DNA from: Podarcis erhardii
Taxonomy: Eukaryota
Direction: 5' to 3' (one strand)
NCBI GenBank assembly: GCA_964252035.1
Contig: OZ176203.1
DNA length: 64,000 bases
Position numbers and translations under genes: made by a program. Below, in pieces: positions 1,759-64,000 of this stretch. Below the pieces are notes generated by a model. It did no database searches. It worked only from the letters and a program-made list of their open reading frames with translations, and was not told where the DNA came from. Each line of letters begins with the position of its first letter. Within the stretch, counting starts at the first letter, position 1.

Positions 1759-3975
1759 TACTGAGTAAGCTAGAAGGCCTACCTTTTTCCATCATCATGC
1801 TAAACAGGAGTCAACATTTCGCTCTTTCCATAACAACTATATCACCACTCTCAGGTGAGCGCAACAGGCAAAGAACCCTTATACCCAATGTTACAGTTGC
1901 TGGGGCGGATTCATCCCAAACACTTGTGCACCAATGATTGCCACCCCTTGCCAAGCTCCAAGGTTGTGAGCAGGGCTTGGGGTCGCTTGGTCACAGGTTG
2001 CCCAGTCCACTCTACCTCGGAATGGCCAAACTTGCAAATGGGGCCGGCCCACCCATGGGGCAAGGTGAGGTGACCGCCTTGGGCAGCAGGATCCACATGG
2101 GCAGCAGCTCTAGATCTGCCACCTCCTCAGAAGCCCCCCAGTGCCACCTCTACAGTGGCTTATTGGCGAATAGCAGGCGCTGCTGGTCTCCTCCTCCCAC
2201 CCCTAGGGAGGAAATGGTGGGGGCTGCCCTCTGGGGCCTCCTGAGCTCTGCACCTGCCTGCTGTGATTCAGAACAGGTCCTGTTCCCCTGCTCCACCCCA
2301 TGGCAGCTTTTGGTTCCCACTTCAACCATCAGCTAAGGTTGATTCGACCAGCAGCAGCCCTTTCCTGATGTAGGTCTATGCTCCCTCCATTTGTTCCCTA
2401 TGTACAGCTTCATTCACTCCTCCTTCCTTGGTGGGGGCTGCAGAATGCCTTTGGGGTGCAAAGATAGGGCACCCAGCATGCCTTGTGAAGTAAGTCATTT
2501 AACTCTCTGCTGGAAAGGCAGGTGGAGGTGGTTATGGGGATGAACATGGAAATAACTTTTTTTATACTCAGCTTTCAATGCCAGTCAAAAATTGCAGGCC
2601 GCTGTTTATAAAGCGTCTACAAATGGCCACAGGGATTACTGGAAAAGCAATGAGGCTTAGCTAATGGATGTGATACCAGTGAGGGGGAGAAAAAAATATT
2701 GGCACTGCCTCCAAACTGCAGAAAAACATGATGGCAGTCATATCCTGCATATGTGCCGTCTTGCCTTCAGCCATCCACCCACAGTGGCCATCACCAAAGT
2801 AATTAAAATTTAACTGCCTTGCAGTCAGAAGCATTTAGAAAACACATCCGTCCCATTTCCCAACCAGAATTATCCCTCTCTCACACACAAATAATCAGGA
2901 AGCCATTTAACCGACTCCCCTCCTTGCCTGCAAGAGATTATATACTCTTCTCTGTCTCTCTTTGTTACCAACTAGTTGCAAGCTATCGGCGCTAGTGATT
3001 CATTGAAACTTCACTGCTAAACTAGGATCTCTGCCATCATTTTACAGTCAACGCTGATTAAAGAGATTAGGCAATACTGCAAACAGAAGTCAGCCTCTCT
3101 GGCACTACTCAGGAGAACTGTGATGGCAAATTCACACATATGGGCTTTCGCATAGAGCAATCTACGACAGCTTGTTCTCGGACATTAGAAAAACGAGGCA
3201 CTGTTAATGGTTATCTCTTTATTATGGAAATGGTTATCTCTTTATTATGGAAATATTGAATCATACCATGATGAAGCATTACCAAGCTCATATCTCTGCA
3301 AGCGGCTTGCAAAATAGGTTCCAGGGCAACTTAAGGTTTAATAAACCCGGCTGTAGGTTTGGGGGAAGCCCTGGGCAAAGCGTCTGAAGGTGGGCCCTCT
3401 TTTCTCTGTCAATGGGCCCTGAATGTGATGGCAGAGTTCCAAGCACCACTTGCCAGCTAAGTCTTTTCATCCTTGCAATTTTGCACAATGCCTAGAACAG
3501 CAAGCTTGGTGCCACTATAAGAAATTAAAAGCGTAGCTAGATTCAGCCACCTGGTGCTGCTCACGAGTGTTGGGCCGAAGGGAAGGTCTTGACCACTGCT
3601 CAAGGATGTCAGGTGCAAATGCCAGGTTCCTTAAAAGCTCACCAGGGGTTCCATAATTGAAAATGTATGACAGGCAAGCTTCTGTGAAAGACAGCTTGCT
3701 CATCGCTGCTGATACGTTGCCTCAGCAGAGTGTCTATTTTGCTCTAGGGCACAGACTCATTTCACACATGAGCAGAAGTAGGGGCCTGGCCAGGGCTATG
3801 TGAAAACTGAGTTACCCTAGAAAACTCTCCAGAATCCTCTGAAAAATGCAGTAGTTGTTGTATTGCAGACATGCTGGAGTTTACATGAAAATGTCTTTTT
3901 TAAAAAGCAAGCAAACTGAAAACTAGAATATCTGAAAACCATTATTTTCAATTATTCCCCATATATGCTCTAAAC

Positions 3976-4158
3976 CAGGGCTGTCAAATGGGTCAATCAT
4001 GATCTACCAGCCAATCGTGGGTGCCCCTGATTGATCAACAACTTTGGGTCTTCCTCCCCACAAAAAGCTCAACAACTTTGGTCAATCCAATGGGTAGATC
4101 ACTACCAGTTTTTTAGAGTGGGAGCAGATCGCAGTCTCTTGGGAGTTGGACATGTGTG
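3976..4158. mobile_element. hAT MITE
   Basis: Perfect 8-bp TSD CTCTAAAC; interior shared with 13917-14188. Confidence 0.85.
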
Positions 4159-5641
4159 CTCTAAACATTCAAACATAAGATGCACACATTAAGGTGGGGT
4201 TGGGAAAAGTTTCTTTGCATCCCACATTTCAAACTTTCTAATTCTCAAAGGGATGGAGGAAACTGAAAGCATTGCGTCAGTTTTGTGGAACACTTAAGGG
4301 AGCCCTTTAGCAGCAAAACGAAAGAGACCAGATACTTTTTCTTTTATGCATTCCTAAGAAGAAAGCGTTCTATTGTTCTCTATTTTTATAATGCAGACCC
4401 TCAAACAGTTATGAATCCCAAGCTTTCTGGTGCACGGAGGAGGAAGTACACATGATTTGCATGGGATAATGCATTCTAAGATAATGCACTGAGTAGCTCC
4501 ACAATAGGTATGGGGAACCTGTGGTCCCCTAGATGCTGTTGGACTACAACTCCCATCAACCCTGACCCATGAGGCTCATGTCATGGAAGTTGGATGAGGG
4601 TATCAGGTTTGGGCTTGGGTGACAAAGACTGCCTTCAGAAAACACAATCTGTTTTGACAGGATTTATTTCGAAGTAAATATACTTGGAATTAGGGTGAGA
4701 GGATCAAATTCTCAGCTAGCCATGATGGTCTCAGCCTACAGCTATTGTGAAAATAATAAGAGTACTTTACATACACCATGAACAGAATTCTTAACAATAA
4801 AGTCTCAATCAAGACAGTTAATTCAACTACTGCCAGGATTTCTTCATTTTTTAAAAAAGCCTAGATTTACGATTGATCAGTTAGAAAGATATCTACATGC
4901 ATTTTCCCACCAGCCATAAATGTTCTCTTTAAGAACAATGTTGCTAGTGCAGTTTCAAGCATGCATAATTTACAGCATTTGAGGAAACGGGGGGAAAAAA
5001 AACACCTTCAAGGAGCTTTTTTTTATATAAGATATATTCTGCTGTCATAAGATGCTCATGTGCCTTTGTGAAGTATTCAAGGCCTTTTCAAAATGAATGT
5101 TCCCCATAAACATCATGCTATCTAAATATACAGGACCGAGGAGCAAGTACTGGATATATAGTCTAGGATTTGTTTGTTTTTTGTTTTAAAATACAGCAGA
5201 CGCTCACACTTTATTCAAACGATGTCTAGGTTTACAAGAGATCTCAGAGGAAAAGAAAAGCCCGCTGTCTGGTCAAGGCGGCCTGTGCGCCTGTTTTCCC
5301 TCAAAACAAATCCCATATGCCCCAGCAAGACACCTACAGATGTGCCATATCCTTACTAACTCGAGGGTTGTTTCTTTTTCCTGCCAACTCAAGCTCCTGC
5401 ATGACACAAATCCAGTGCCCAGACAACGCCACAAACTGAACACAAAAACAGCAGCCTCCATCCGAGTGGGACCCGCACGACAGTTGTCCTCAAAGATGTC
5501 TCCAAGACGGCATCCGCCTTCAAAGCGCAGCACGTCCAGCTTCCCCCCGCCCTCAAAAAACGTCAAAACAAAGCATTTTTTTAAACAAGAAAAAAATGGC
5601 AAGCATCCTTACCCAAAGAGGTAGGGCACGTATCTTTTCGA

Positions 5642-30300: not shown

Positions 30301-33300
30301 ACAAGGGGGGGGGGGGAGAGACAGACTTCTCTGTCTTCATACCTTAAAAGGCAACACTTCCACTGTTGTGTTGACGAATATATCTCCTGGATGTTCTGGG
30401 TTGCCGCTGTGGAACAGGAATCTATAAAAGTGAAGATTAAGAAGCCCAAGATGATCAGTCATGGCTAATGAGAAGTATGGAAACATATAAAGGCCACCTA
30501 AAAGACCGAAACCCCACAAAATCCTGTTTACTTAGAACTTAATGTGTTCAAAGGGGTTTACTCCCAGGTAAGTATGGAAAAGACTGCTGCCAATGACACC
30601 CAAAAGATTTAATGAAAGCACGTTGAAAGATTATAACATTGGGTATCCAACATGGTGCTAACTAAATGTTCCATCAGTGCAAGTATTTCTGCTTGTGCAA
30701 TGGAAGGTTTTCCACCTCTCCTATCACTACATGCTCCCTCAATCTGTTCTAGGGGTTCCTCCAACACTCTCAAGCAGATTTGGGGGTAGCTGGAGTGCAC
30801 CCAGGAGGAGGACGGGGGGAAGTCTCATTACCAAGGCAGAAATCCTTGCACTGATGATATATGTTAGTTGAATACTGCCCCTGGTTCTTGTACACAGTTG
30901 TCAAAGGAATCATAATGGACTAAAATTGCCAAATGAGATTTGTATGTTCTTAACCGCTATCAGTGTAAGGATGCCTAGAAGGAATTCAACCACAGTGGTA
31001 CCTCGGATTACAGACGCTTCAGGTTACAGACGCTTCAGGTTACAGACTCCGCTAACCCAGAAATAGTGTTTCAGGTTAAGAACTTTGCTTCAGGATGAGA
31101 ACAGAAATCGTGCGGCGGCAGCAGGAGGCCCCATTAGTTAAAGTGGTACCTCAGGTTAAGAACAGTTTCAGGTTAAGAACAGACCTCCAGAACGAATTAA
31201 GTTCTTAACCCGACGTACCACTGTATGTTTAAATAAGAAGTATGTTTATATTACAACCCCCAAATCAATTCAGTAATTTCAAACCATGAATGGGTAACCT
31301 TGCCCCCTGAATTTGTTGTTAAGACTATCAAGTCCCATTAGTCCAGCCAGCATGGTCAATAGCTATGGATAGGAGTTGGTCCAACAACACCTGTAAGCCA
31401 CAGGTGATCTACCCCTGCTTTAAATAAATCTAGATCTTTTGTCAGGAGTGCTATTTTGGCATGCACAGACAGTGACATGAAAATTGTGAATATTTCCTCA
31501 AAGGGGAACCTTAACCTAAAAGCAAACTAGACATCCTATCTAGAGGGAAGTGTGAGGTCCTAGGCAGGAACATGGGGGTGGAGGATGCCTTGGGAAGAGC
31601 CCAACAAGCTACAGCAACAGGAGGTCTCTGGGCTGGCGATCCAAAGGGCACAATTGTTTGGGCAGATTTCAAGTAAATCATGAGAAAAGCTGACCAAAAG
31701 AACCCCTAAATATAAATCACTTTCACTTATTTCTGTTACTTGCAAGCTGTAAAAAAGAGGACTGCCTATACAGTTATAAATCCTTACACATTACAGCATG
31801 ATAGCAGAAAGTAAAGTCCAATGTATGTAAGCAATTCTGTTCCTTGCTCCCCCCCACCCTGTAACCATTCATTTGACCTATAGTGAAATGAAGTTCCTGC
31901 AATCTTATGCACACTTATCTGAGAGAAAGTCTCAATTAATACATGTTAACTTCCAGGTAAATAGTCATAGGATTATTCTGTTTGTGTCTTCTCAGGAAAC
32001 ATTTCCATGCAAAGTTAATTCTTCTAATTTTATTGATTTTACATAAGCAGCTTCTATTTCGAAGAAATACTCCGTCCCACAGCTTCAAATTACAGTACTT
32101 TCCATCTACATATATGCAACTGCTTCCCTTATCTTAAAATTCAAAGCAGTTGTAAAGTAGTATTTACCAAGCAGATGGCCAAAAAATAGATGTAGATAGA
32201 AATTCATCTGAAACCTGAATGGCTGAATACAATTACATATATAAATAGTCCAAAAGAGATGAATTAAAGCTGACTCAATTCCTACACATGGACGATGAGA
32301 ACACAAGCACAGATTAATTGGCATCAGTATACACAACAACATGTTGTTGTAAATCTGTCACTTGCTGCCTTGTTTAATATACTGTAAGCAATCTTCACAC
32401 AAAATATTACTTCAGAACTGTTTTGAACTTTAAGTTAAGGAAAACAGCTACATCTTCATATTGTACATATCTTTGAATCCATGTAGCAAGATCTCTTCAA
32501 TGTAGAAAAAGCCCCTGTGACTTGAATGAAACAGAAGACTTAACTTGAATGGAAATGCTATTTTTGCACAAGACACCATGACAAACTTTACTGTTGCGTG
32601 AGGAACATCAAGGCGAAGAAGGTCCTTAGCCACCGCTTTCAACCATTTGAACCTCCACAGAAATGTCAGTACAGTGGTACCTCGCAAGACGAAATTATTT
32701 CGTTCTGCGAGTTTTTTCGTCTTGCGATTTTTTTCGTCTTGCGAAGCACGGATTTTGGAAAAGCTTCAAAAATCACCAGTCTTCAAAAACCTCAAAAAAG
32801 GCTCGAAGTCAAGTCGCAACTGCACCCCCTGAATGCATGGTTTCAATAAAAAGGAAACAAACTTGCAAGACGTTTTCGTCTTGCGAAGCAAGCCCATAGG
32901 GAAATCCGTCTTGCGAAGCAACTCAAAAAACGAAAAACTCTTTCGTTTTGCGAGTTTTTCGTCTTACGAGGCATTCGTCTTGCGAGGTACCACTGTAAAA
33001 CCTTTAAGAGTTCAGGTAACATTCCTTACAACATATGATACACATTTACAGTGGTGCCCCACAAGACGAACGCCTCGGAAGACGAAAAACTCGCTAGACG
33101 AAGGAGTTTTTCATTTTCTTAGCCGCTTCGCAAGACGCATCTCCCTATGGGCTTGCTTCGCAAAACGAAGCTTGCCCCGCAAGCTCCGGGGATAGCAGGG
33201 AAGCGCAGCGTGTCTTCCCTGCTGTCCCCGGACCTCTTTTGAAGCAAGGGTTGGCGGGGAGAAGATCGCTTCTCCCCATTGCCAGCCCCGCGCGCCTTCC

Positions 33301-42300: not shown

Positions 42301-45300
42301 ATGTAGTCTGCCCTTTCAGTTGTTTCATTGCAGGATTCTCCCACCAAGCCAAGTGCTGTCAAGCTGTGGCCTGCTACAAGCCATCTTACCAAGCAGTCCC
42401 ACAAAGAAGCAGCAAGATTTCAAGTACCTATTTGTTTTCCCTGTAGGGTGAACATCATGGAGAGGGAATTTCAAAACCAGGAGAACAGCATGGTGCAGAG
42501 AAATTAACTTTTTCCCCTATGGAGGCAATCTGAGTATTTCACCCCCAGTTACTATTAATACTAGGGGGCGGGGGAACATGGCAGTTTCCATTTATGAAAT
42601 TTCCATGTCCTAAATTTTCAATGCACTCTACAATCTACAATGAATGAAGTTGTTATTCCCCAGTACCCTGAGAAATTCTTACCTGACTCTTTCTTTTGAG
42701 TCTCCAAACGTCTCTTTTAGGTTTGTCAAGTCAGGATAGTAGGTTGCAGGTGGAGCTATTACTTCCACCAAGCCAGAACTGATTTCTTTAGAAAACCTGT
42801 ATTCAGAAAGTTAAAAATTGTCATTATATTCTATTCTAGGAAACGCTGCACTCCAAAAACCCAATGTGGTGATCAAATGTTGGAGCTGGATTGTTCAGTC
42901 ACAGTGCTCACCCAGTAGCACCGGGCGAATTAGTATCAGCCTAATCATATTGTGGCCAAGTTAATATCAGCTTAACCCAGGCAAAGGCAAACTCGGCTCT
43001 CCAGATGTTTTGGGACTACAACTCCCATCATCTCTGACCACTAGTCCTGTTAGCTAGGGATGATGGGAGCTGTAGTCCCAAAACATCTGGAGGGCTGGGT
43101 TTGCCTATGCCTGGCTTAACCACTAATGTAGATTTCATTTATAAAGTGATATGTACAGGTTGGGGTCCAAAGGCCGTGAGGTGACTTCTGTGTGATCTCT
43201 CCCTTCCACAAAACCTCCCTATGTCCCTTGAAAATCCCACTGGCATAGAATGCAACAATGCACAAGCAGCTGCAACTAGCAAGAACTGGCAGCCAGGTCT
43301 TCTACAAAAGCAGAAATTGCTTTAAGGTCTGGCCTTAATTCTCATAATCTATTATTTAAAACCACAATATGCATTAACTTCTTAAGTATGCAAGTAGCTG
43401 CTTCTATACATCAGCGCTAGCATAGCAGCTTTAGCATAGGTGCTTTGCAATCCATTTATTTCATGCCAACATAATCCGTTTATGACAGACTGAACCTTTT
43501 AATCCCATTTGCTGTTTTGCAAGTTGAGACCATCTAATTGCTCCATGCAATTTACCACAGTATGCAACCCATGCATATGAAGAAAACTATTACTAAAACT
43601 GAAATAAACAATGGATAAACAATGAAATAAACTTACTCCTTTTCTAGGCTTGCTACAACGCCATTTACATAATCAAGATCTGTCTAGGGGGAGAAAAAGA
43701 GGCATTTTAAAGCAACATTTTTGAACCAAGTATAACAAATTAAATGATTGTATAATTTCTACAGCATTTTTTCAAAAATTCAAGTAGCAGTGAAGTGGCT
43801 TAGAAATTATTTAAATCAGTGTTTCCCAACCGGTGTTCCGCAGCACACTAGTGTGCCGCGAGACGTTGCCTGGTGTGCCGTGGGAGGGAGGCGGGCGAGT
43901 CGGGCGGCGAGAGGCGGGGCGGCGGCGGCGAGCACATGCGGGGCGGCGAGCGAGCTCCCTCCCACATCCCATCGCCGCTCGCTTCGGCCGGCCGCCCCGT
44001 GCTCCGCGCTGGTGTTGGCCAGCCTTGCGCACCCGGGGGATCTCCCCCCGAGAGCGCAAGGCTTGCGAGCGGCAGCCGGCAGCACGGAGCACGGGGCGCC
44101 CTTCGGAGGCCATTCCGTGCTCCGCGCTGTTGTTGGCCAGCCTTGCGCACCCGGGGGATCTCCCTCCCCCGTGAGCGGAAGGCTTGCCGGTGGCAGCTGG
44201 CAGCGCGGAGCACGGGGCGCCCTTCGGAGGCCGCCCCGTGCTCCGCGCTGGTGTTGGCCAGCCTTGCGCACCCGGGGGATCTCCCCCCGAGAGCTCAAGG
44301 CTTGCGGGCGGCAGCTGGCAGCGCGGAGCACGGGGCGCCCTTCGGAGGACGCCCCATGCTCCGCGCTGGTGTTGGCCAGCCTTGCGCACCCGGGGGATCT
44401 CCCCCCGAGAGCGCAAGGCTTGCGGGCGGCACCTGGCAGCGCGGAGCACGGGGCGCCCTTCGGAGGCCATTCCGTGCTCCGCGCTGGTGTTGGCCAGCCT
44501 TGCGCACCCGGGGGATCTCCCCCCGAGAGCGCAAGGCTTGCGGGCGGCAGCTGGCAGCGCGGAGCATGGGGCGCCCTTCGGAGGACGCCCCGTGCTCCGC
44601 GCTGGTGTTGGCCAGCCTTGCGCACCCGGGGGATCTCCCCCCGAGAGCGCAAGGCTTGCGGGCGGCAGCTGGCAGCGCGGAGCACGGGGCGCCCTTCGGA
44701 GGCCATTCCGTGCTCCGCGCTGGTGTTGGCCAGCCTTGCGCACCCGGGGGATCTCCCCCCGAGAGCGCAAGGCTTGCGGGCGGCACCTGGCAGCGCGGAG
44801 CACGGGGCGCCCTTCGGAGGACGCCCCGTGCTCCGCGCTGGTGTTGGCCAGCCTTGCGCACCCGGGGGATCTCCCCCTGGGAGCGCAAGGCTTGCGGGCG
44901 GCAGCTGGCAGCGCGGAGCACGGGGCGCCCTTCGGAGGACGCCCCGTGCTCCGCGCTGGTGTTGGCCAGCCTTGCGCACCCGGGGGATCTCCCCCCGGGA
45001 GCGCAAGGCTTGCGGGCGGCAGCTGGCAGCGCGGAGCACGGGGCGCCCTTCGGAGGACGCCCCGTGCTCCGCGCTGGTGTTGGCCAGCCTTGCGCACCCG
45101 GGGGATCTCCCCCCGAGAGCGCAAGGCTTGCGGGCGGCAGCTGGCAGCGCGGAGCACGGGGCACCCTTCGGAGGCCGACCCGTGCTCCGCGCTGTTGTTG
45201 GCCAGCCTTGCGCACCCGGGGGATCTCACCCCGGGAGCGCAAGGCTTGCGGGCGGCAGCTGGCAGCGCGGAGCACGGGGCGCCCTTCGGAGGACGCCCCG

Positions 45301-48300
45301 TGCTCCGCGCTGGTGTTGGCCAGCCTTGCGCACCCGGGGGATCTCCCCCCGAGAGCGCAAGGCTTGCGGGCGGCAGCTGGCAGCGCGGAGCACGGGGCGC
45401 CCTTCGGAGGACGCCCCGTGCTCCGCGCTCGTGTTGGCAAGCCTTGCGCACCCGGGGGGCGCGGGGGGCGCCCTGAAACAGAGGGTTCCCCATGCTGCGG
45501 ACTGTAGCCTGCCGCCCGACGCGCGGGGCGCCCTGAAGCAGAGCGCCCCTCGCGCCAGGCAGACATGGGCCAGCCCCACAAGCTCGGGGGACAGCGGGGA
45601 GGCGCAGCACCGCCATCCCACTGTTCCCCGACCTGGTTTTGGGGGGGGGAATAAAGGAAAAAAAATTTTCCTTTATTTCCCCCCCCCCCCAAAAAAAAGT
45701 AGGTGCGTCCTATGGGACGGAGCGTCCTATGGGACGAAAAATACGGTACTTACTATTTCATAATAAAGTAATTATAAAATACTTTCTTTGTGTTTATTTG
45801 ATGCCTATTAAAGAGAGTTACTTTATATATAGTCAATATAGGCACAGAGTTAATTTTTTAAACATTTTCTAATGGTGGTGTGCCTCGAGATTTTTTTCAT
45901 GAAACAAGTGTGCCTTTGCCCAAAAAAGGTTGGGAAACACTGATTTAAATACATAAATTAATTATTAATGTTCATCAAAAAGTTAGCATGACAGAGGTCA
46001 CAAAATGTGTCCATTCAAACACAGAATAGTAAGGGGTTGATTTCAATCTCGTACACTGGCCAGCACAATTTTTAATTCAATTCAGAAAATTGTGTTTATG
46101 AATTTACTACATTCACGTCAAGTTAAGCAAATCCCAGTGTTACGGCCTTCAGTGAGAATAGAGCCTATGTGGTGGTATAATAACCATGGCCATTATCAAC
46201 TGTGAATGACACATGTATCTTTAAAGCAATGCTCTCCATGGCTAAATAAAAAAACATAAGGGATAGGGAAAGGTTCCAGTCCCTGCTTCTATGTATGTTG
46301 TTGAGAAAAACAGTAATTTAAAACTAGGATGATCAAGGGTCTAGAAGCCAAGTCCTATGAGGAATGGTTGAAGAAGCTGGGTATGTTTAGCCTGGAAAAG
46401 AAGAGACTGAGAGGAGATACAATAGCCATCTTCAAATATCTCAAGGGCTGTCACATGGAAGATGGAGCAAGCTTGTTTTCTCCTGCTCTGGAAGGTAGGA
46501 CTCGAACTGATGGCTCACAGAAACTCCTTGGAACCTAAGTCTCACTCCTGTCCCCTTTTCCACCTTCCCCAGGTTGCTTCTCCCACTTACAGAAACAATG
46601 GATATGTACATTTGTGTCATCACGTCTTGGCAGTCACACAAAAATTAGTTTCTGAACGGATCTGGGGAATGAAGAGGCTTTTATCCTGCTCTATATAAAT
46701 GTCAAATCTGAATTTACCCCAAGGGTACAGAAAAATCTCTCCAAATCCATTAGAAAAGCACGTAGCTCAAATGGTTGCTAAACTACTGTACACTGCTTAA
46801 GCCACCATGGTAGTTTTTGATACATTTGCTCTACATGCAATCTGTAGGGTTTTTCATGTTGTATATTTAGATTGTTTTATAACTTTAAAGGCAGTATGTA
46901 TTAACATATTTGCACTGTGAAGCGACCTTTACCTTACCTTGCAGTCTAACACACCATTCTAATAAAAAAGGCATCGCTTTTGCTTACTCTGAGTGTCTCA
47001 GTGCCAACAAACCACCACCCTGCAATAATCTACCTCTGAAGGCAGCCTAAGAAAAGCAACAAATACAGAATGTTCCCTGCCCTTCTTGTGCTAACTTCAA
47101 CAAACTGACCTGCACTTCTTTCCATCCTGCACGAAAGTTCCAACAAAGCATTGGAAAATAAAATGTGGTTCAATACATACCAGCCAGAGTTTTTCCTTTT
47201 GACTGATCATATGTAAAACTATAAACAGCTAAAAGCTGAATTTTTACAGACACAAGCAAAGTGCTAAAATGAATAATCAGAAATATCTCACTTGTCTACA
47301 ATACACATCTACCTTGCAAGTGCTCTCATCTCTGAAGTATGGTGCTAAGAGAATTGCAGTAGGAAACTGACTCACAAAGCCTCTCCTGTATTTCACACAT
47401 GTTTTTTTACCATGCACAGAGCCCATGAGTTATCCTCTGGTTTCACATTGTTTTGTGTACCAAGCTCTCTTTGGAAGCTGTGTGGTCTTCCCAGTTCCTG
47501 TTTTGGATGCCCTGCTTCATAGATCTATGAAATCAATTGCATTACATCAGTTGTAACAGCAAAAAAGTGGTATCTAGGGGGCTAAATAGGGACGCAGGTG
47601 GCGCTGTGGGTTAAACCACAGAGCCTAGGACTTGCCGATCAGAAGGTTGGCGATTCAAATCCCCGTGACGGGGTGAGCTCCTGCTGCTCGGTCCCTGCTC
47701 CTGCCAACCTAGCAGTTTGAAAGCACATCAAAGTGAAAGTAGATAAATAGGTACCGCTTCGGCGGGAAGGTAAACAGCGTTTCCGTGTGCTGCTCTGGTT
47801 CGCCAGAAGCGGCTTAGACATGCTGGCCACATGCTGACCCGGAAGCTGTATGCTGGCTCCCTTGGCCAATAAAGCGAGATGAGTGCCGCAACCCCAGAGT
47901 CAGCCACGACTGGACCTAATGGTCAGGGATCCCTTTACCTTTAGGAGGCTAAACGGCATTTTCCTTGGGTAAAAGAACTGTAGAGGTCTGAGTACTGAGA
48001 ACCTGCAGTATCTCCATGATGGAAGTACAGTTCAGGAAAAATACATGCTCCAAATTAGAAATTGGTGCACCGTTTAGAAAGACTGTTTTTGCTTTTTAAA
48101 AAACAAACAAACAAACTTCATACAATAATTCCTCCTTTACATGCAACACAGAAGTGTACTACATCAAATACAGGTTTACATAACTTCCAGACTGACTCTG
48201 TTTCTGCTCCAGGCTCAATGCCAATAGTAGCTTCTGCAGTTAAATAAGCAATATGTAGAGTCACGGCAAACAGTCTTAACCATATATTTGCAGAGCTGGC

Positions 48301-61407: not shown

Positions 61408-61876
61408 TCTATGTTTCTGTACTGAGTATAATTGGCTGACTGAGAGTCAGTGAGCAGACACTCAACTCATATAAGATATAGTCAACAGGTGGGCCATATG
61501 TCCAGATAACTAGTGTTCAACCTGTTCACATGGGGGTTGCTCTACCCCAAAGATCCGATACTGGGGGATGCTCACTGATCCATCTTTATAACTAGAGGGG
61601 GAAAGTAGTCTGTGACCCCCAGGACACTGAGACCTGGCTGCAATTCTACCTGGATAGCAAGAGTTTTGCTTCATTGATCTACACCCTAGTAGTCTCCCAA
61701 ATGAAATACTGACTTTAAAACTAGTCTGGAAATTACCAGAACATGGCTAAAAGTCTGCCCAACATAATCACATCAGGGCAGTAATTAGCCATTCGTTGGC
61801 TCACACGCCATTTATGGGCCCAATTCAAGATGATAGTTCAGAAACTTGGGTACATGGAAGTCCATCTCACTGCATA

Positions 61877-62135
61877 CCATATTTTTCGCTCTATAAGACG
61901 CACCAGACCACAAGACACACCTAGTTTTTGGAGGAGAAAAACAAGAAAAAAAATATTCTGAATCTCAGAAGCCAGAACAGCAAGAGGGATCGCTGCGCAG
62001 TGAAAGCAGCAATCCCTCTTGCTGTTCTGGCTTCTGTGATAGCTGCGCAGCTTGTATTCGCTCCATAAGACGCACACACATTTCCCCTTATTTTTTAGGA
62101 GGGAAAAAGTGAGTCTTATAGAGCAAAAAATATGG
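61877..62135. mobile_element. pogo/Tigger-like MITE
   Basis: TA|CCATATTTTTCGCTCTATAAGAC...GTCTTATAGAGCAAAAAATATGG|TA; internal 25-bp perfect inverted repeat cagaagccagaacagcaagagggat / atccctcttgctgttctggcttctg. Confidence 0.88.
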
Positions 62136-64000
62136 TACATACCCACCTGACATTAAGACCCTTCAAGGTTTTTCTCCAAACACTCCTGCAAAGTGACTAC
62201 AGGACAGAAGCACTCCAGCTGCAAACTACCCTCCCGAGAGAGGTTCATTTACTTTGGTATCAGTTTAACACTAAGCAATTATCTTTTTTATTTTTATCAG
62301 TTCTGAATCTGAGCCGCTTTACCCTCTGCAACAATTTTCTATGCTGCTTCTATACTAATGGTTTTATAAGAAAAAGGATAGCAGGAAGGCAAGACCTTAG
62401 ATATAAGCCACAAATGATAGCAGCACATGAGAAGGTCAAAACACAACAGTTAATGTTATCTTGCCCCTGCAACATTCAGAGTGCATGACATGGGTGAATA
62501 ATTTCTGTAGAATAAGCAGTCCCACCAAAGCAAAAAACAACAACCAAACACAGAACAACTACTCCTATACTATCAATCAGGGAGATAAAAGGGAGAGGAA
62601 AGAAAAGTTCTACAAGCTATTTAAATTGGAAAAGAAGTGTGCAGATGGAATCCTATACCCATTTTAATTGTTAGATGAGCAGATATATAAGCTAATCACC
62701 AAATGGGACCATAAACCTGAGTTGCAGTTGCCACAATGGAATGTCTAGGCCCCATATTCCCCCACAATGGGATTTGTTGTTGTTGTTGTTGATGATTTCA
62801 TTTCTATATCGCTATAACAAGTCTCAAAGTGGTTTACAACACATTAAAACATCAAACAGAACAACCTAGAATAAAACAAATATTTCAGATCCTTCTCTAA
62901 GTGACATTTTGCTTTCCCCGGTCATCAGCCTGGCATCCAGAGATCTCCACATGGTTGTGATTGGACCAGCGCCAGTCACAAAACACGCCTAGTGGTGGGC
63001 TAATTTCTAACACTGCCCACTTACATGAGAATAAATCCCATTAAATTTCATGGGACATAGTTGTGAATACAAGGCTGCACTGTAAACTGAAAATTAAAGA
63101 AAGAAAGGAATATATCTAGATAATTCTGTACAGATGTAAGGGCAATACCCAACGCTTCATGAGTGGACACAATAGGACTTCCCCTTTCTTCTAGTCTGTG
63201 CCTAAAAATGTACTCTGAGAGGTCCCCCAATGCACAAAAGCGGGTCTGGGGATGCTGTAAACTAGTGGGTAGGGAAAAGAGGAAATCCCAATGCATGGGC
63301 AGGTCCATTCTGCAAGTGGGTTGAGAGCTTTGGCTGGTGTGAAAAACATGGCCAAAAGTCAAATTTAATTAGATTTCGTTTTGCAGGTTTATTAAACTGT
63401 GAACGCATTATCTGTTAGAAGTATTCAGTTCCCTCAAGCCCTTTAATGGTTTTTTTTTGGGGGGGGGAGATTAACCCCCCCCCAAAAAAACCCTCAAACC
63501 AATCAACCAGACTTTGAATTGGTAAATAAAGCTCTCTAAACTTTACACACTTAGGTAATTTCTTCTAAACTATTAAATAATCCATCAAGTCAATCTATTC
63601 CCCCATTCACCAAGGAATAGTAACAGGGATTGTTTCTCATATTACACTTGAAAGACACAGGTGCATTGGGAGTCACACCAACATTAAAATGTCTATGAAA
63701 ACACAGTGTAAGAGCTTAACCATGTGCTTTTGTCTTTAAGAGAAGAGGCATACCAGAATGCCAGGGGGACTTTCTGAGACAGGACATTTTATCTCAGAGA
63801 CCAATGCACAAACAGGACTTCTGATTAACTGTTAGCCTGGGGAACAATTCCTATGAATCAATGTCGAATATAATGTGGAAAAACAAACGAAGTCACATCT
63901 CTACTGACTAGTAAAAGCCAGCATTTAGTTGCTTTAATTTGACACATCTGGCTACAGAATAATCTTTCTGCAAGGATGTGACTGGAAGAGGCAAAGGCAG

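What the first reader, a model, noticed from the sequence alone, without database searches (positions are those of the whole stretch)
43817..45942. Young hAT element carrying a 118-bp tandem array with two interleaved symmetry axes per unit
Seen: perfect 15-bp TIRs and an 8-bp TSD enclose 12.3 copies of a CpG-dense 118-mer with little CpG decay. Within a unit, nt 1-13 pair with 82-94 (GTGCTCCGCGCTG / CAGCGCGGAGCAC), 23-32 with 56-65, and 36-41 with 47-52 around a GATC apex. In the alternative register, nt 82-100 pair over 19 bp with nt 113-118 plus 1-13 of the next unit, around CCCTTCGGAGG. That loop reads c-UUCG-g on the plus strand and c-GAA-g on the minus strand. Established: cUUCGg is an extra-stable RNA tetraloop and cGAAg an extra-stable ssDNA mini-hairpin. 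Inference: the array is effectively (A,A-inverse)n and more likely grew by iterated fold-back or template-switch synthesis than by simple slippage. It may be a switchable cruciform or structured-RNA cargo that is mobilised in trans by a hAT transposase.
Basis: partly seen in the sequence, partly recalled or inferred. Interest (0 to 1): 0.8.

Follow-up and report, generated by a model that had tools for sequence, protein, structure and literature searches.

The report
hAT transposon carrying MITE hairpin minisatellite
A young 2.1-kb cut-and-paste (hAT) transposon in a wall-lizard genome carries a piece of a second, smaller transposon. That piece includes a GC-rich 118-bp tandem array built of hairpins. 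The arrangement is a known kind of nested repeat, but the hairpin stems have stayed base-paired through many sequence changes between two lizard species.

Summary
The element spans 43817-45942, with perfect 15-bp TIRs, an 8-bp TSD (ATTTAAAT) and a 118-bp x 12.4 array of strongly self-complementary units (fold z about -10). The interpretation needs correcting in three ways.

1. The array does not belong to the hAT. A homologous 115-bp x 7.8 array (about 74% identity) lies in a Podarcis lilfordi contig, inside a TA-flanked MITE with ends TACCGTATTTTTCG...ATAGGACGCAC and no hAT end on the 4,984-bp contig, which is cut off inside the MITE's right end. The same MITE arm sits next to the array here (45748 inwards, minus strand). 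The hAT cargo is therefore a truncated MITE.
2. The array grew by head-to-tail copying of whole units. Units are 95% alike, whereas each half is only 71-73% like its inverse half, with a 10-nt asymmetry shared by all units and both species. Iterated fold-back is not supported.
3. The UUCG loop and the GATC apex are not conserved.

One result is more notable. Between the two arrays, stems diverge as fast as loops (26% vs 32%), yet 9 of 40 pairs changed on both sides and stayed paired (about 1 expected). Both arrays keep CpG o/e near 0.85-0.89. With only two lineages, selection and template-switch homogenisation of the arms cannot be told apart.

Other first-reader notes in this genome report similar hAT-plus-array elements; I did not check them.

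The parts
43809..43816 (.). Left target-site duplication ATTTAAAT
   Evidence: Identical 8-mer directly outside both TIRs. It fits the hAT target pattern nTnnnnAn (established knowledge).
43817..43880 (+). hAT left arm: 15-bp TIR CAGTGTTTCCCAACC (43817-43831) plus a subterminal region with GTGTGCC at 43851 and 43873
   Evidence: Perfect TIR match. All four plus-strand GTGTGCC copies in the 64-kb window lie in the two arms of this element.
43881..43992 (.). GC-rich spacer of unclear origin. Its right part looks like a degenerate array unit.
   Evidence: GC 0.73, CpG o/e 1.07 for 43817-43992. Weak array-like BLAST matches begin at 43919. No other match in the window or in L001.
43993..45458 (-). 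118-bp palindromic minisatellite, 12.4 units. The strand given is the one that matches the plus strand of the P. lilfordi MITE.
   Evidence: TRF; unit table; unit identity 95.4% with lag-2 above lag-1 in units 3-8; folds; homology to L001 3867-4765.
45459..45635 (-). GC-rich MITE-type interior. It has a 24-nt direct repeat (45460-45483 and 45520-45543) and a ~70-nt hairpin module (45572-45641) shared with the unrelated MITE at 33173-33241.
   Evidence: Sequence; local alignment z = 17 against shuffles.
45636..45698 (-). Poly-G / poly-C A-T hairpin typical of the MITE's subterminal region
   Evidence: Sequence. Aligns with the same feature in the P. lilfordi MITE and in the window copy at 61.9 kb.
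45699..45748 (-). Terminal arm of a TA-flanked (Tc1/mariner-like) MITE: TACCGTATTTTTCGTCCCATAGGACGCTC plus a second CCATAGGACGCAC
   Evidence: Pattern match at 45720-45748 (-) with 1 mismatch, 0 expected by chance. Alignment to L001 3755- and to window 61875-.
45749..45942 (+). AT-rich hAT right arm with GTGTGCC at 45878 and 45908 and the TIR at 45928-45942
45943..45950 (.). Right target-site duplication ATTTAAAT

Best explanation
This is a composite, non-autonomous hAT transposon that inserted recently at an ATTTAAAT site. Its interior is mostly a truncated copy of a different transposon: a TA-flanked, Tc1/mariner-like MITE (ends TACCGTATTTTTCG...ATAGGACGCAC). One sublineage of that MITE carries a GC- and CpG-rich minisatellite of about 115-118 bp. 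Each unit has the form X-I-X'-L, with 19-bp inverted arms X/X', a partly palindromic 68-nt interior I and a 12-nt linker L.

Shown:
- the anatomy of the element;
- the MITE origin of the array;
- growth by head-to-tail duplication of whole units;
- conservation of pairing through compensated changes.

Inferred:
- A MITE inserted into a longer hAT. An internal deletion, of the kind abortive gap repair makes during hAT transposition, then removed one MITE end and the hAT interior. The remnant is moved in trans by a hAT transposase.
- The array expands and contracts by unequal exchange or replication slippage, which the hairpins themselves promote.
- The arms stay complementary mainly through a mutational or amplification bias, not through a host function. 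The bias could be short template switches between inverted arms that copy one arm from the other, preferential amplification of well-pairing units, or both.
- High CpG reflects escape from germline methylation, rapid turnover, or both.
For: hAT hallmarks:
- Perfect 15-bp TIRs and an 8-bp TSD.
- Subterminal GTGTGCC x2 at each end; these are the only four plus-strand copies in 64 kb.
- No Pfam domain in the element's ORFs.
- The TIR CAGTGTTTCCCAAC with an 8-bp TSD is published for hAT2_NA MITEs (PMC3845634).

MITE origin:
- phmmer of the array's minus-strand ORF hit one protein, CAI7935525.1 of Podarcis lilfordi.
- Its contig (L001) has a 115-bp x 7.8 array, about 74% identical to this one, local-alignment z 31.5.
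- That array starts about 110 bp inside a MITE end, TACCGTATTTTTCGTTCTATAGGACGCAC. No hAT TIR is present on the contig.
- The same arm, in the same orientation relative to the array, is at 45748-45630 here.
- An array-less copy of the MITE lies at 61875-62137.

Direct duplication:
- Unit-unit identity averages 95.4% (up to 99.2%), with lag-2 higher than lag-1 in units 3-8.
- Half versus inverse half is only 71-73% identical, with 10 nt of indels.
- The same asymmetric internal loop is present in every unit of both species.
- Shared variants (nt 53, 77, 112-116) sit in direct register.

Pairing kept:
- 93.4% of cells are paired, against 35-45% when partners are slid by 1-3 columns; 11 pairs have changes on both sides, against 2-4 when slid.
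- Consensus against consensus: 21/80 differences in stem columns and 11/34 in unpaired columns. Of the stem differences, 18 fall in 9 fully compensated pairs, 2 are wobble changes and 1 breaks a pair. About 1 compensated pair is expected by chance; P(>=9) = 8e-7.

Mechanism by precedent:
- Template switching between inverted arms is documented to create and maintain hairpins and to homogenise the arms (PMC8794818, PMC8604942).
- Tandem-repeat-bearing MITEs and other TEs are documented (PMC3879986, PMC4079207, PMC7492417).
Against: - Only two independent arrays could be compared, so the nine compensated pairs may come from very few events. Selection on structure is not excluded.
- Stems evolve as fast as loops yet stay paired, and CpG o/e stays at 0.85-0.89 in both arrays despite 26-28% divergence. 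Both are also what a selected, unmethylated structural element would show.
- The nested-insertion-then-deletion history is inferred. No second MITE end or deletion scar was identified, and the origin of the left GC-rich spacer (43881-43992) is unknown.
- I could not verify copy number, the other hAT-plus-array copies noted in this genome, or whether the orthologous site is empty in relatives.
Confidence: 0.7

Rival explanations
1. The hairpin array is a selected structured-RNA module carried by the MITE and hAT. Each 48-50-nt X'-L-X hairpin or ~106-nt X-I-X' hairpin would be processed into small RNAs (miRNA-, hpRNA- or piRNA-precursor-like).
For: Nine compensated pairs between the two arrays, with stems as divergent as loops. 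Strong predicted RNA folds. Hairpin size is close to that of a pre-miRNA. Sub-threshold, generic matches to miRNA-hairpin models.
Against: - All Rfam hits are far below their gathering scores (31-34 bits against 70). They occur on both strands, as expected for any palindrome.
- The loop sequences (UUCG, GATC) are not conserved.
- The two strands fold equally well, so nothing points to a transcribed strand.
- There are no expression data, and only two lineages.
- Template switching can produce the same pattern with no function (PMC8794818).
Confidence: 0.12
2. The array acts at the DNA level. It would be a CpG-island-like, unmethylated, cruciform-prone block that benefits the transposon (for example by resisting silencing or aiding excision and repair) or has been co-opted by the host as a regulatory or insulator element.
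For: CpG o/e is 0.85 here and 0.89 in P. lilfordi, against 0.21-0.23 in the flanks, despite 26-28% divergence between the arrays. Single-stranded DNA folds reach -24 to -53 kcal/mol per hairpin, z -6 to -10. Other unchecked notes in this genome describe hAT elements with CpG-island-like cargo.
Against: No methylation, chromatin or expression data. Eight of 29 within-array variant cells are CpG transitions, so some CpG decay is going on. High CpG could simply reflect recent amplification from a young master copy. No known protein-binding motif was tested.
Confidence: 0.08
3. One reading: the array is (A, A-inverse)n and was built by iterated fold-back or template-switch synthesis, each half copied from the previous one.
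For: The unit is significantly self-reverse-complementary: best ungapped rotation 70/118 against a shuffle mean of 55.5, sd 2.9. There are two dyad axes per unit.
Against: - Half versus inverse half is only 71-73% identical with 10 nt of indels, while whole units are 95-99% identical.
- The asymmetric loop (about 14 nt against about 8 nt) is the same in all units and in P. lilfordi.
- Variants are shared in direct register. The one mirrored pair (G1A in unit 4, C94T in unit 5) consists of two CpG transitions that do not face each other across an axis.
Confidence: 0.04
4. Pack-type capture: the GC-rich interior is a host CpG island or promoter fragment picked up by the hAT, as reported for other hAT elements in this genome.
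For: CpG-island-like composition. Followed-up notes describe hAT elements carrying gene 5' ends elsewhere in this genome. The origin of the left spacer (43881-43992) is unexplained.
Against: At least 45572-45748 of the cargo, and the array itself, are homologous to MITE sequence. No protein or Pfam similarity was found for any reading frame.
Confidence: 0.04
5. Assembly artefact: the array length or structure is a mis-assembly.
For: Tandem palindromic arrays are hard to assemble. The P. lilfordi contig shows many single-base indels between units.
Against: The units carry an aperiodic pattern of distinct variants and one 121-nt unit. The flanks, TIRs and TSD are intact. An independent assembly of another species has a homologous array.
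Confidence: 0.02

Closest known systems
Tandem-repeat-containing MITEs, e.g. DTC84 of the clam Donax trunculus (PMC3879986)
   Same: A non-autonomous, TIR-flanked element whose centre is a short array of satellite-like repeats, with unit number varying between copies (here 12.4 units, against 7.8 in P. lilfordi).
   Different: Here the units are GC/CpG-rich nested palindromes. The array-bearing MITE is itself truncated and carried inside a hAT element. The host is a vertebrate.
Tetris foldback transposon of Drosophila virilis (PMC4079207), and Helentron-borne satellite-like arrays in the oyster (PMC7492417)
   Same: Transposons that carry and spread internal tandem repeats which can seed satellites.
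   Different: In Tetris the repeats build the long terminal inverted repeats. Here the TIRs are 15 bp and the array is internal and in one orientation. The element is not a Helitron.
hAT2_NA MITEs of insects (PMC3845634)
   Same: The published 14-nt TIR CAGTGTTTCCCAAC matches the first 14 nt of this TIR exactly, and both have an 8-bp TSD.
   Different: Only the TIR was compared. The interiors are unknown to me and no homology beyond the ends was tested.
Template-switch mutations that create and maintain hairpins or homogenise inverted-repeat arms (PMC8794818, PMC8604942, PMC10710096)
   Same: Clusters of complementary changes on both arms of a stem, with pairing kept and no need for stepwise selection.
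   Different: Those cases are rRNA, miRNA or coding sequences traced on phylogenies. Here the process is only inferred, from two arrays.
Pack-type gene-fragment-carrying DNA transposons (reported for other hAT elements of this genome in earlier notes)
   Same: hAT ends enclosing foreign, CpG-rich cargo.
   Different: The cargo here is another transposon's sequence, not a host gene fragment.

Membership tests
hAT superfamily, non-autonomous element | 8-bp target-site duplication | tested here: met
   ATTTAAAT on both sides.
hAT superfamily, non-autonomous element | Short terminal inverted repeats (about 10-25 bp) starting with CAG or TAG | tested here: met
   15/15 bp CAGTGTTTCCCAACC. The first 14 nt are published for hAT2_NA.
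hAT superfamily, non-autonomous element | Mobilised by a hAT transposase (BED/RNase-H/hATC protein) encoded elsewhere | not testable with these tools
   No Pfam domain in the element's ORFs, so it is non-autonomous. No partner transposase was searched for in the genome.
TA-flanked Tc1/mariner-like MITE (TACCGTATTTTTCG family) | Both terminal inverted repeats, flanked by TA | tested here: not met
   Only one arm is present (45720-45748, minus strand). The cargo is a truncated copy, not a complete member. Complete or near-complete copies: window 61875-62137, and L001 from 3755 onwards.
TA-flanked Tc1/mariner-like MITE (TACCGTATTTTTCG family) | Sequence homology of the arm and interior to other members | tested here: met
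   Alignment A2. Array homology z 31.5.
Tandem-repeat-containing MITE / TE-borne satellite | Internal head-to-tail array whose copy number differs between copies | tested here: met
   12.4 x 118 bp here, 7.8 x 115 bp in L001.
Foldback element | Long terminal inverted repeats built of the tandem repeats | tested here: not met
   The TIRs match for only 15 bp. The array is a single internal block in one orientation.
Pack-type gene-capturing transposon | Cargo homologous to a host gene exon or promoter | tested here: inconclusive
   No protein or Pfam similarity, and most of the cargo is MITE-derived. The host genome could not be searched for a source of 43881-43992.
Any Rfam RNA family (including miRNA precursors) | Score at or above the family's gathering threshold | tested here: not met
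   Best scores are 35.1 bits against 43 (SNORA36) and 34 against 70 (mir-3155), with hits on both strands.

The most novel reading that the evidence does not exclude
The nested-hairpin array is a conserved, selected structural module of a Podarcis MITE lineage that escapes germline CpG methylation. It would act as an RNA (a small-RNA precursor cluster) or as cruciform-forming DNA. It spreads on at least two transposon chassis (the TA-MITE and the hAT), making it a mobile, structure-constrained, CpG-island-like element in a vertebrate.
Probability: 0.15. Interest if true: 0.7.

Novelty: new member of a known kind. Interest (0 to 1): 0.35.

Why it matters
As a nested transposon with an internal minisatellite, this is ordinary genome furniture. 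Its practical value is for annotation:
- It explains a CpG-island-like spike in the sequence.
- It explains a spurious "hypothetical protein" in the P. lilfordi annotation.

Two observations deserve a proper census. First, the stems have stayed paired through 9 double changes while diverging as fast as the loops. Second, CpG density has stayed high in both species. If many independent copies show the same pattern, the family would be a clean natural system for separating selection on structure from template-switch homogenisation of inverted repeats. It would also let one ask how transposon-borne CpG-rich DNA avoids methylation decay in a reptile genome.

Tried and rejected
- Protein-route searches for more copies:
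  - Plus-strand array ORF: nothing.
  - Minus-strand ORF against 1.84 billion representatives: one hit only, P0001.
  - P0001 itself: only itself, in a cluster of size 1.
  - The opposite strand of the L001 array: nothing.
- Metagenome scan with the conserved inner-stem pattern: 70 loci, all chance GC-rich palindromes with no wider similarity.
- Rfam: only sub-threshold generic hairpin hits.
- Literature search by TIR or MITE-end sequence: the hAT TIR matches hAT2_NA of insects. The MITE end gave only unrelated primer hits.
- A Podarcis-specific TE literature search returned nothing relevant.
- Homology between this array and the 33.2-kb array in the same window: rejected (z -0.8 and 1.1). A flanking 70-nt module is shared, however.
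- Other copies of the hAT ends in the window: none.
- I compared the unit with the CTCF motif by eye. It did not fit, and no motif tool was run.
- Not possible with these tools: testing the orthologous site for presence or absence, and access to the other copies noted in this genome.

Full report
**Observation.**
The element is as described. The 15-mer CAGTGTTTCCCAACC occurs perfectly only at 43817-43831 (+) and 45928-45942 (-) in the window. It is bracketed by ATTTAAAT on both sides.

Tandem Repeats Finder reports a 118-bp unit, 12.4 copies, 43993-45458, 94% matches. The array has GC 0.75 and CpG o/e 0.85, against CpG o/e 0.21-0.23 in the flanks.

Two units fold at -110 kcal/mol as DNA (z -10.2) and -193.9 kcal/mol as RNA (z -10.7). 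Single hairpins fold at -24 to -54 kcal/mol with z -6 to -9.

Two refinements apply. The outer stem is 19 bp in both registers. And two axes per unit follow automatically once a unit holding an inverted repeat is tandemly repeated.

**What the hAT part is.**
- Beyond the TIRs the two ends are not inverted copies of each other.
- Each end carries two copies of GTGTGCC. These are the only four plus-strand copies in 64 kb.
- No ORF of the element hits Pfam. The long ORFs exist only because the array has almost no stop codons in any frame.
- The TIR CAGTGTTTCCCAAC with an 8-bp TSD is published for hAT2_NA MITEs of insects (PMC3845634).

It is therefore a non-autonomous hAT-type element. The perfect TIRs and TSD argue for a recent insertion.

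**Where the array comes from.**
A phmmer search of the array's minus-strand reading frame against 1.84 billion representative proteins gave one hit. That hit is CAI7935525.1, a "hypothetical predicted protein, partial" of Podarcis lilfordi. It is encoded on a 4,984-bp contig of GCA_947686815.1, fetched as L001. A paper search confirms that accession as the P. lilfordi assembly.

- L001 holds a 115-bp x 7.8 array at 3867-4765. It is about 74% identical to this one, with my plus strand matching its minus strand. The local alignment has z 31.5 against shuffles.
- In L001 the array begins about 110 bp inside a transposon end, TACCGTATTTTTCGTTCTATAGGACGCAC, followed by a poly-G/poly-C hairpin.
- The other side of the array runs into ...CATAGGACGCACACACATTTCCCCTTCATTTTTGGAGGGGAAAAAGTGCGTCCTATGGAG, where the contig ends.
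- L001 has no hAT TIR.

The same arm lies in my element at 45748 inwards on the minus strand, immediately before the hAT right arm. It has the TIR, a duplicated CCATAGGACGCAC and the poly-G/poly-C hairpin, and the same orientation relative to the array. A 263-bp copy of this MITE family without an array, flanked by TA, lies at 61875-62137.

The array therefore belongs to a sublineage of a TA-flanked, Tc1/mariner-like MITE, and the hAT carries a one-ended fragment of it. The most economical history is nested insertion followed by internal deletion. That history is inferred, not shown.

The segment 45572-45641 is also homologous (z 17) to 33173-33241, which lies inside a different MITE that has its own hairpin array. 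The two arrays themselves show no detectable similarity (z -0.8 and 1.1).

**How the array grew.**
- Units are on average 95.4% identical, up to 99.2%. In units 3-8, identity at lag 2 (98.3%) exceeds that of neighbours (94-96%), which suggests duplication or conversion in roughly 236-bp steps.
- The half-unit between the two axes is only 71-73% identical to the inverse of the other half, and the halves differ by 10 nt in length.
- That asymmetry is an internal loop of about 14 nt on one side and about 8 nt on the other. It is present in every unit and in P. lilfordi.
- Variants shared between units (nt 53, 77, 112-116) are in direct register.
- The only mirror-image pair (G1A in unit 4, C94T in unit 5) consists of two CpG transitions that do not face each other across an axis.

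Iterated fold-back copying would make neighbouring halves as alike as neighbouring units, and would erase the asymmetry. It is not supported. The array grew by ordinary head-to-tail duplication.

**Are the hairpins conserved?**
I aligned 11 units of this array (minus strand) with 8 units of L001 (alignment A1).
- RNAalifold recovers the nested hairpin, with 40 pairs.
- On that structure 93.4% of cells are paired, against 35-45% when partners are slid by 1-3 columns.
- Eleven pairs show changes on both sides, against 2-4 when slid.
- Between the two consensus units, paired columns differ at 21 of 80 sites and unpaired columns at 11 of 34. Stems are therefore not conserved in sequence.
- Yet 18 of the 21 stem differences form 9 fully compensated pairs, 2 are wobble-compatible and 1 breaks a pair.
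- With independent sides about one compensated pair is expected; P(>=9) is about 8e-7.

However, these are effectively two lineages. A handful of template-switch events that recopy one arm from the other would give the same picture without any function; such events are documented (PMC8794818, PMC8604942). Preferential amplification of well-pairing units would do the same.

In L001 the linker is CCCTCCGGAGGG, which makes a perfect 48-nt palindrome around CCGG, and the apex reads GACC rather than GATC. Both strands fold equally well. All Rfam matches are generic, two-stranded and far below threshold.

**CpG.**
Both arrays keep CpG o/e at 0.85-0.89 despite 26-28% divergence. Youth of this one copy alone does not explain that. 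It needs either a lineage that escapes germline methylation or fast turnover from young masters. Eight of 29 within-array variant cells are CpG transitions, so some decay does occur.

**Comparison with known kinds.**
MITEs and other transposons carrying internal satellite-like arrays are well documented: DTC84 (PMC3879986), Tetris (PMC4079207) and Helentron-borne arrays (PMC7492417). Nested and internally deleted hAT derivatives are textbook. I therefore class this as a new member of a known kind.

First-reader notes in the same genome describe at least three further hAT-plus-array elements, one with a 118-bp unit 32 Mb away. Several followed-up hAT elements there carry CpG-rich cargo. This suggests the composite is a multi-copy family, but I could not read those loci.

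**Limits.**
- No lizard genome, Dfam or Repbase could be searched by DNA.
- All further protein-route searches and a metagenome scan were blank or gave only chance hits.
- Not tested: the orthologous site, copy number, methylation, transcription and long-read support.

Noticed in passing
L001:4229-4684 (Podarcis lilfordi CANTUW010001212.1): The annotated protein CAI7935525.1 ('hypothetical predicted protein, partial') is an ORF read straight through the MITE-borne 115-bp minisatellite. It is almost certainly a spurious gene model: its cluster has one member and it has no homologues.
   Followed up: partly
window:61875-62137: A complete 263-bp TA-flanked MITE of the TACC(A/G)TATTTTTCG...TATAAGACGCAC family, without an array. 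Its centre is a ~70-nt hairpin, CAGAAGCCAGAACAGCAAGAGGGATCGC...GGCTTCTG.
   Followed up: partly
window:45572-45641 and window:33173-33241: A ~70-nt hairpin module (GGGGA.AGC.GGGA.GCGCAGC...CTGT.CCC.GACCT..TTTTG) is shared between the hAT cargo and a different MITE (TIR CAGTGGTGCCCCACAAGACGAA) that carries its own ~113-bp hairpin array. Alignment z is 17, while the arrays themselves are unrelated. Hairpin modules seem to be exchanged between MITE families.
   Followed up: partly
L001:3530-3650: A second, short MITE-like palindrome, TACCGTATTAGGCGACTGGGCGTATAAGACC...GTCTTATACGCCGGAATCTACGGTA, lies just upstream of the array-bearing MITE. It looks like a relative of the same superfamily.
   Followed up: no
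window:45585-45696: A sub-threshold Rfam match to SNORA36 (35.1 bits against a gathering score of 43, E 9e-4). It overlaps the poly-G/poly-C hairpin and is probably an artefact of the palindrome.
   Followed up: no
window:43817-43831 / 45928-45942: The first 14 nt of the TIR are identical to the published TIR of hAT2_NA in Manduca sexta (CAGTGTTTCCCAAC, 8-bp TSD). They differ by one base from the Bombyx and Rhodnius copies (PMC3845634). Whether this reflects a shared hAT lineage, or even horizontal transfer, was not examined.
   Followed up: no
window:45460-45483 and 45520-45543: A 24-nt direct repeat, CGCG(G/C)GGGGCGCCCTGAA(A/G)CAGAG, spaced 60 nt apart, between the array and the MITE arm.
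   Followed up: no
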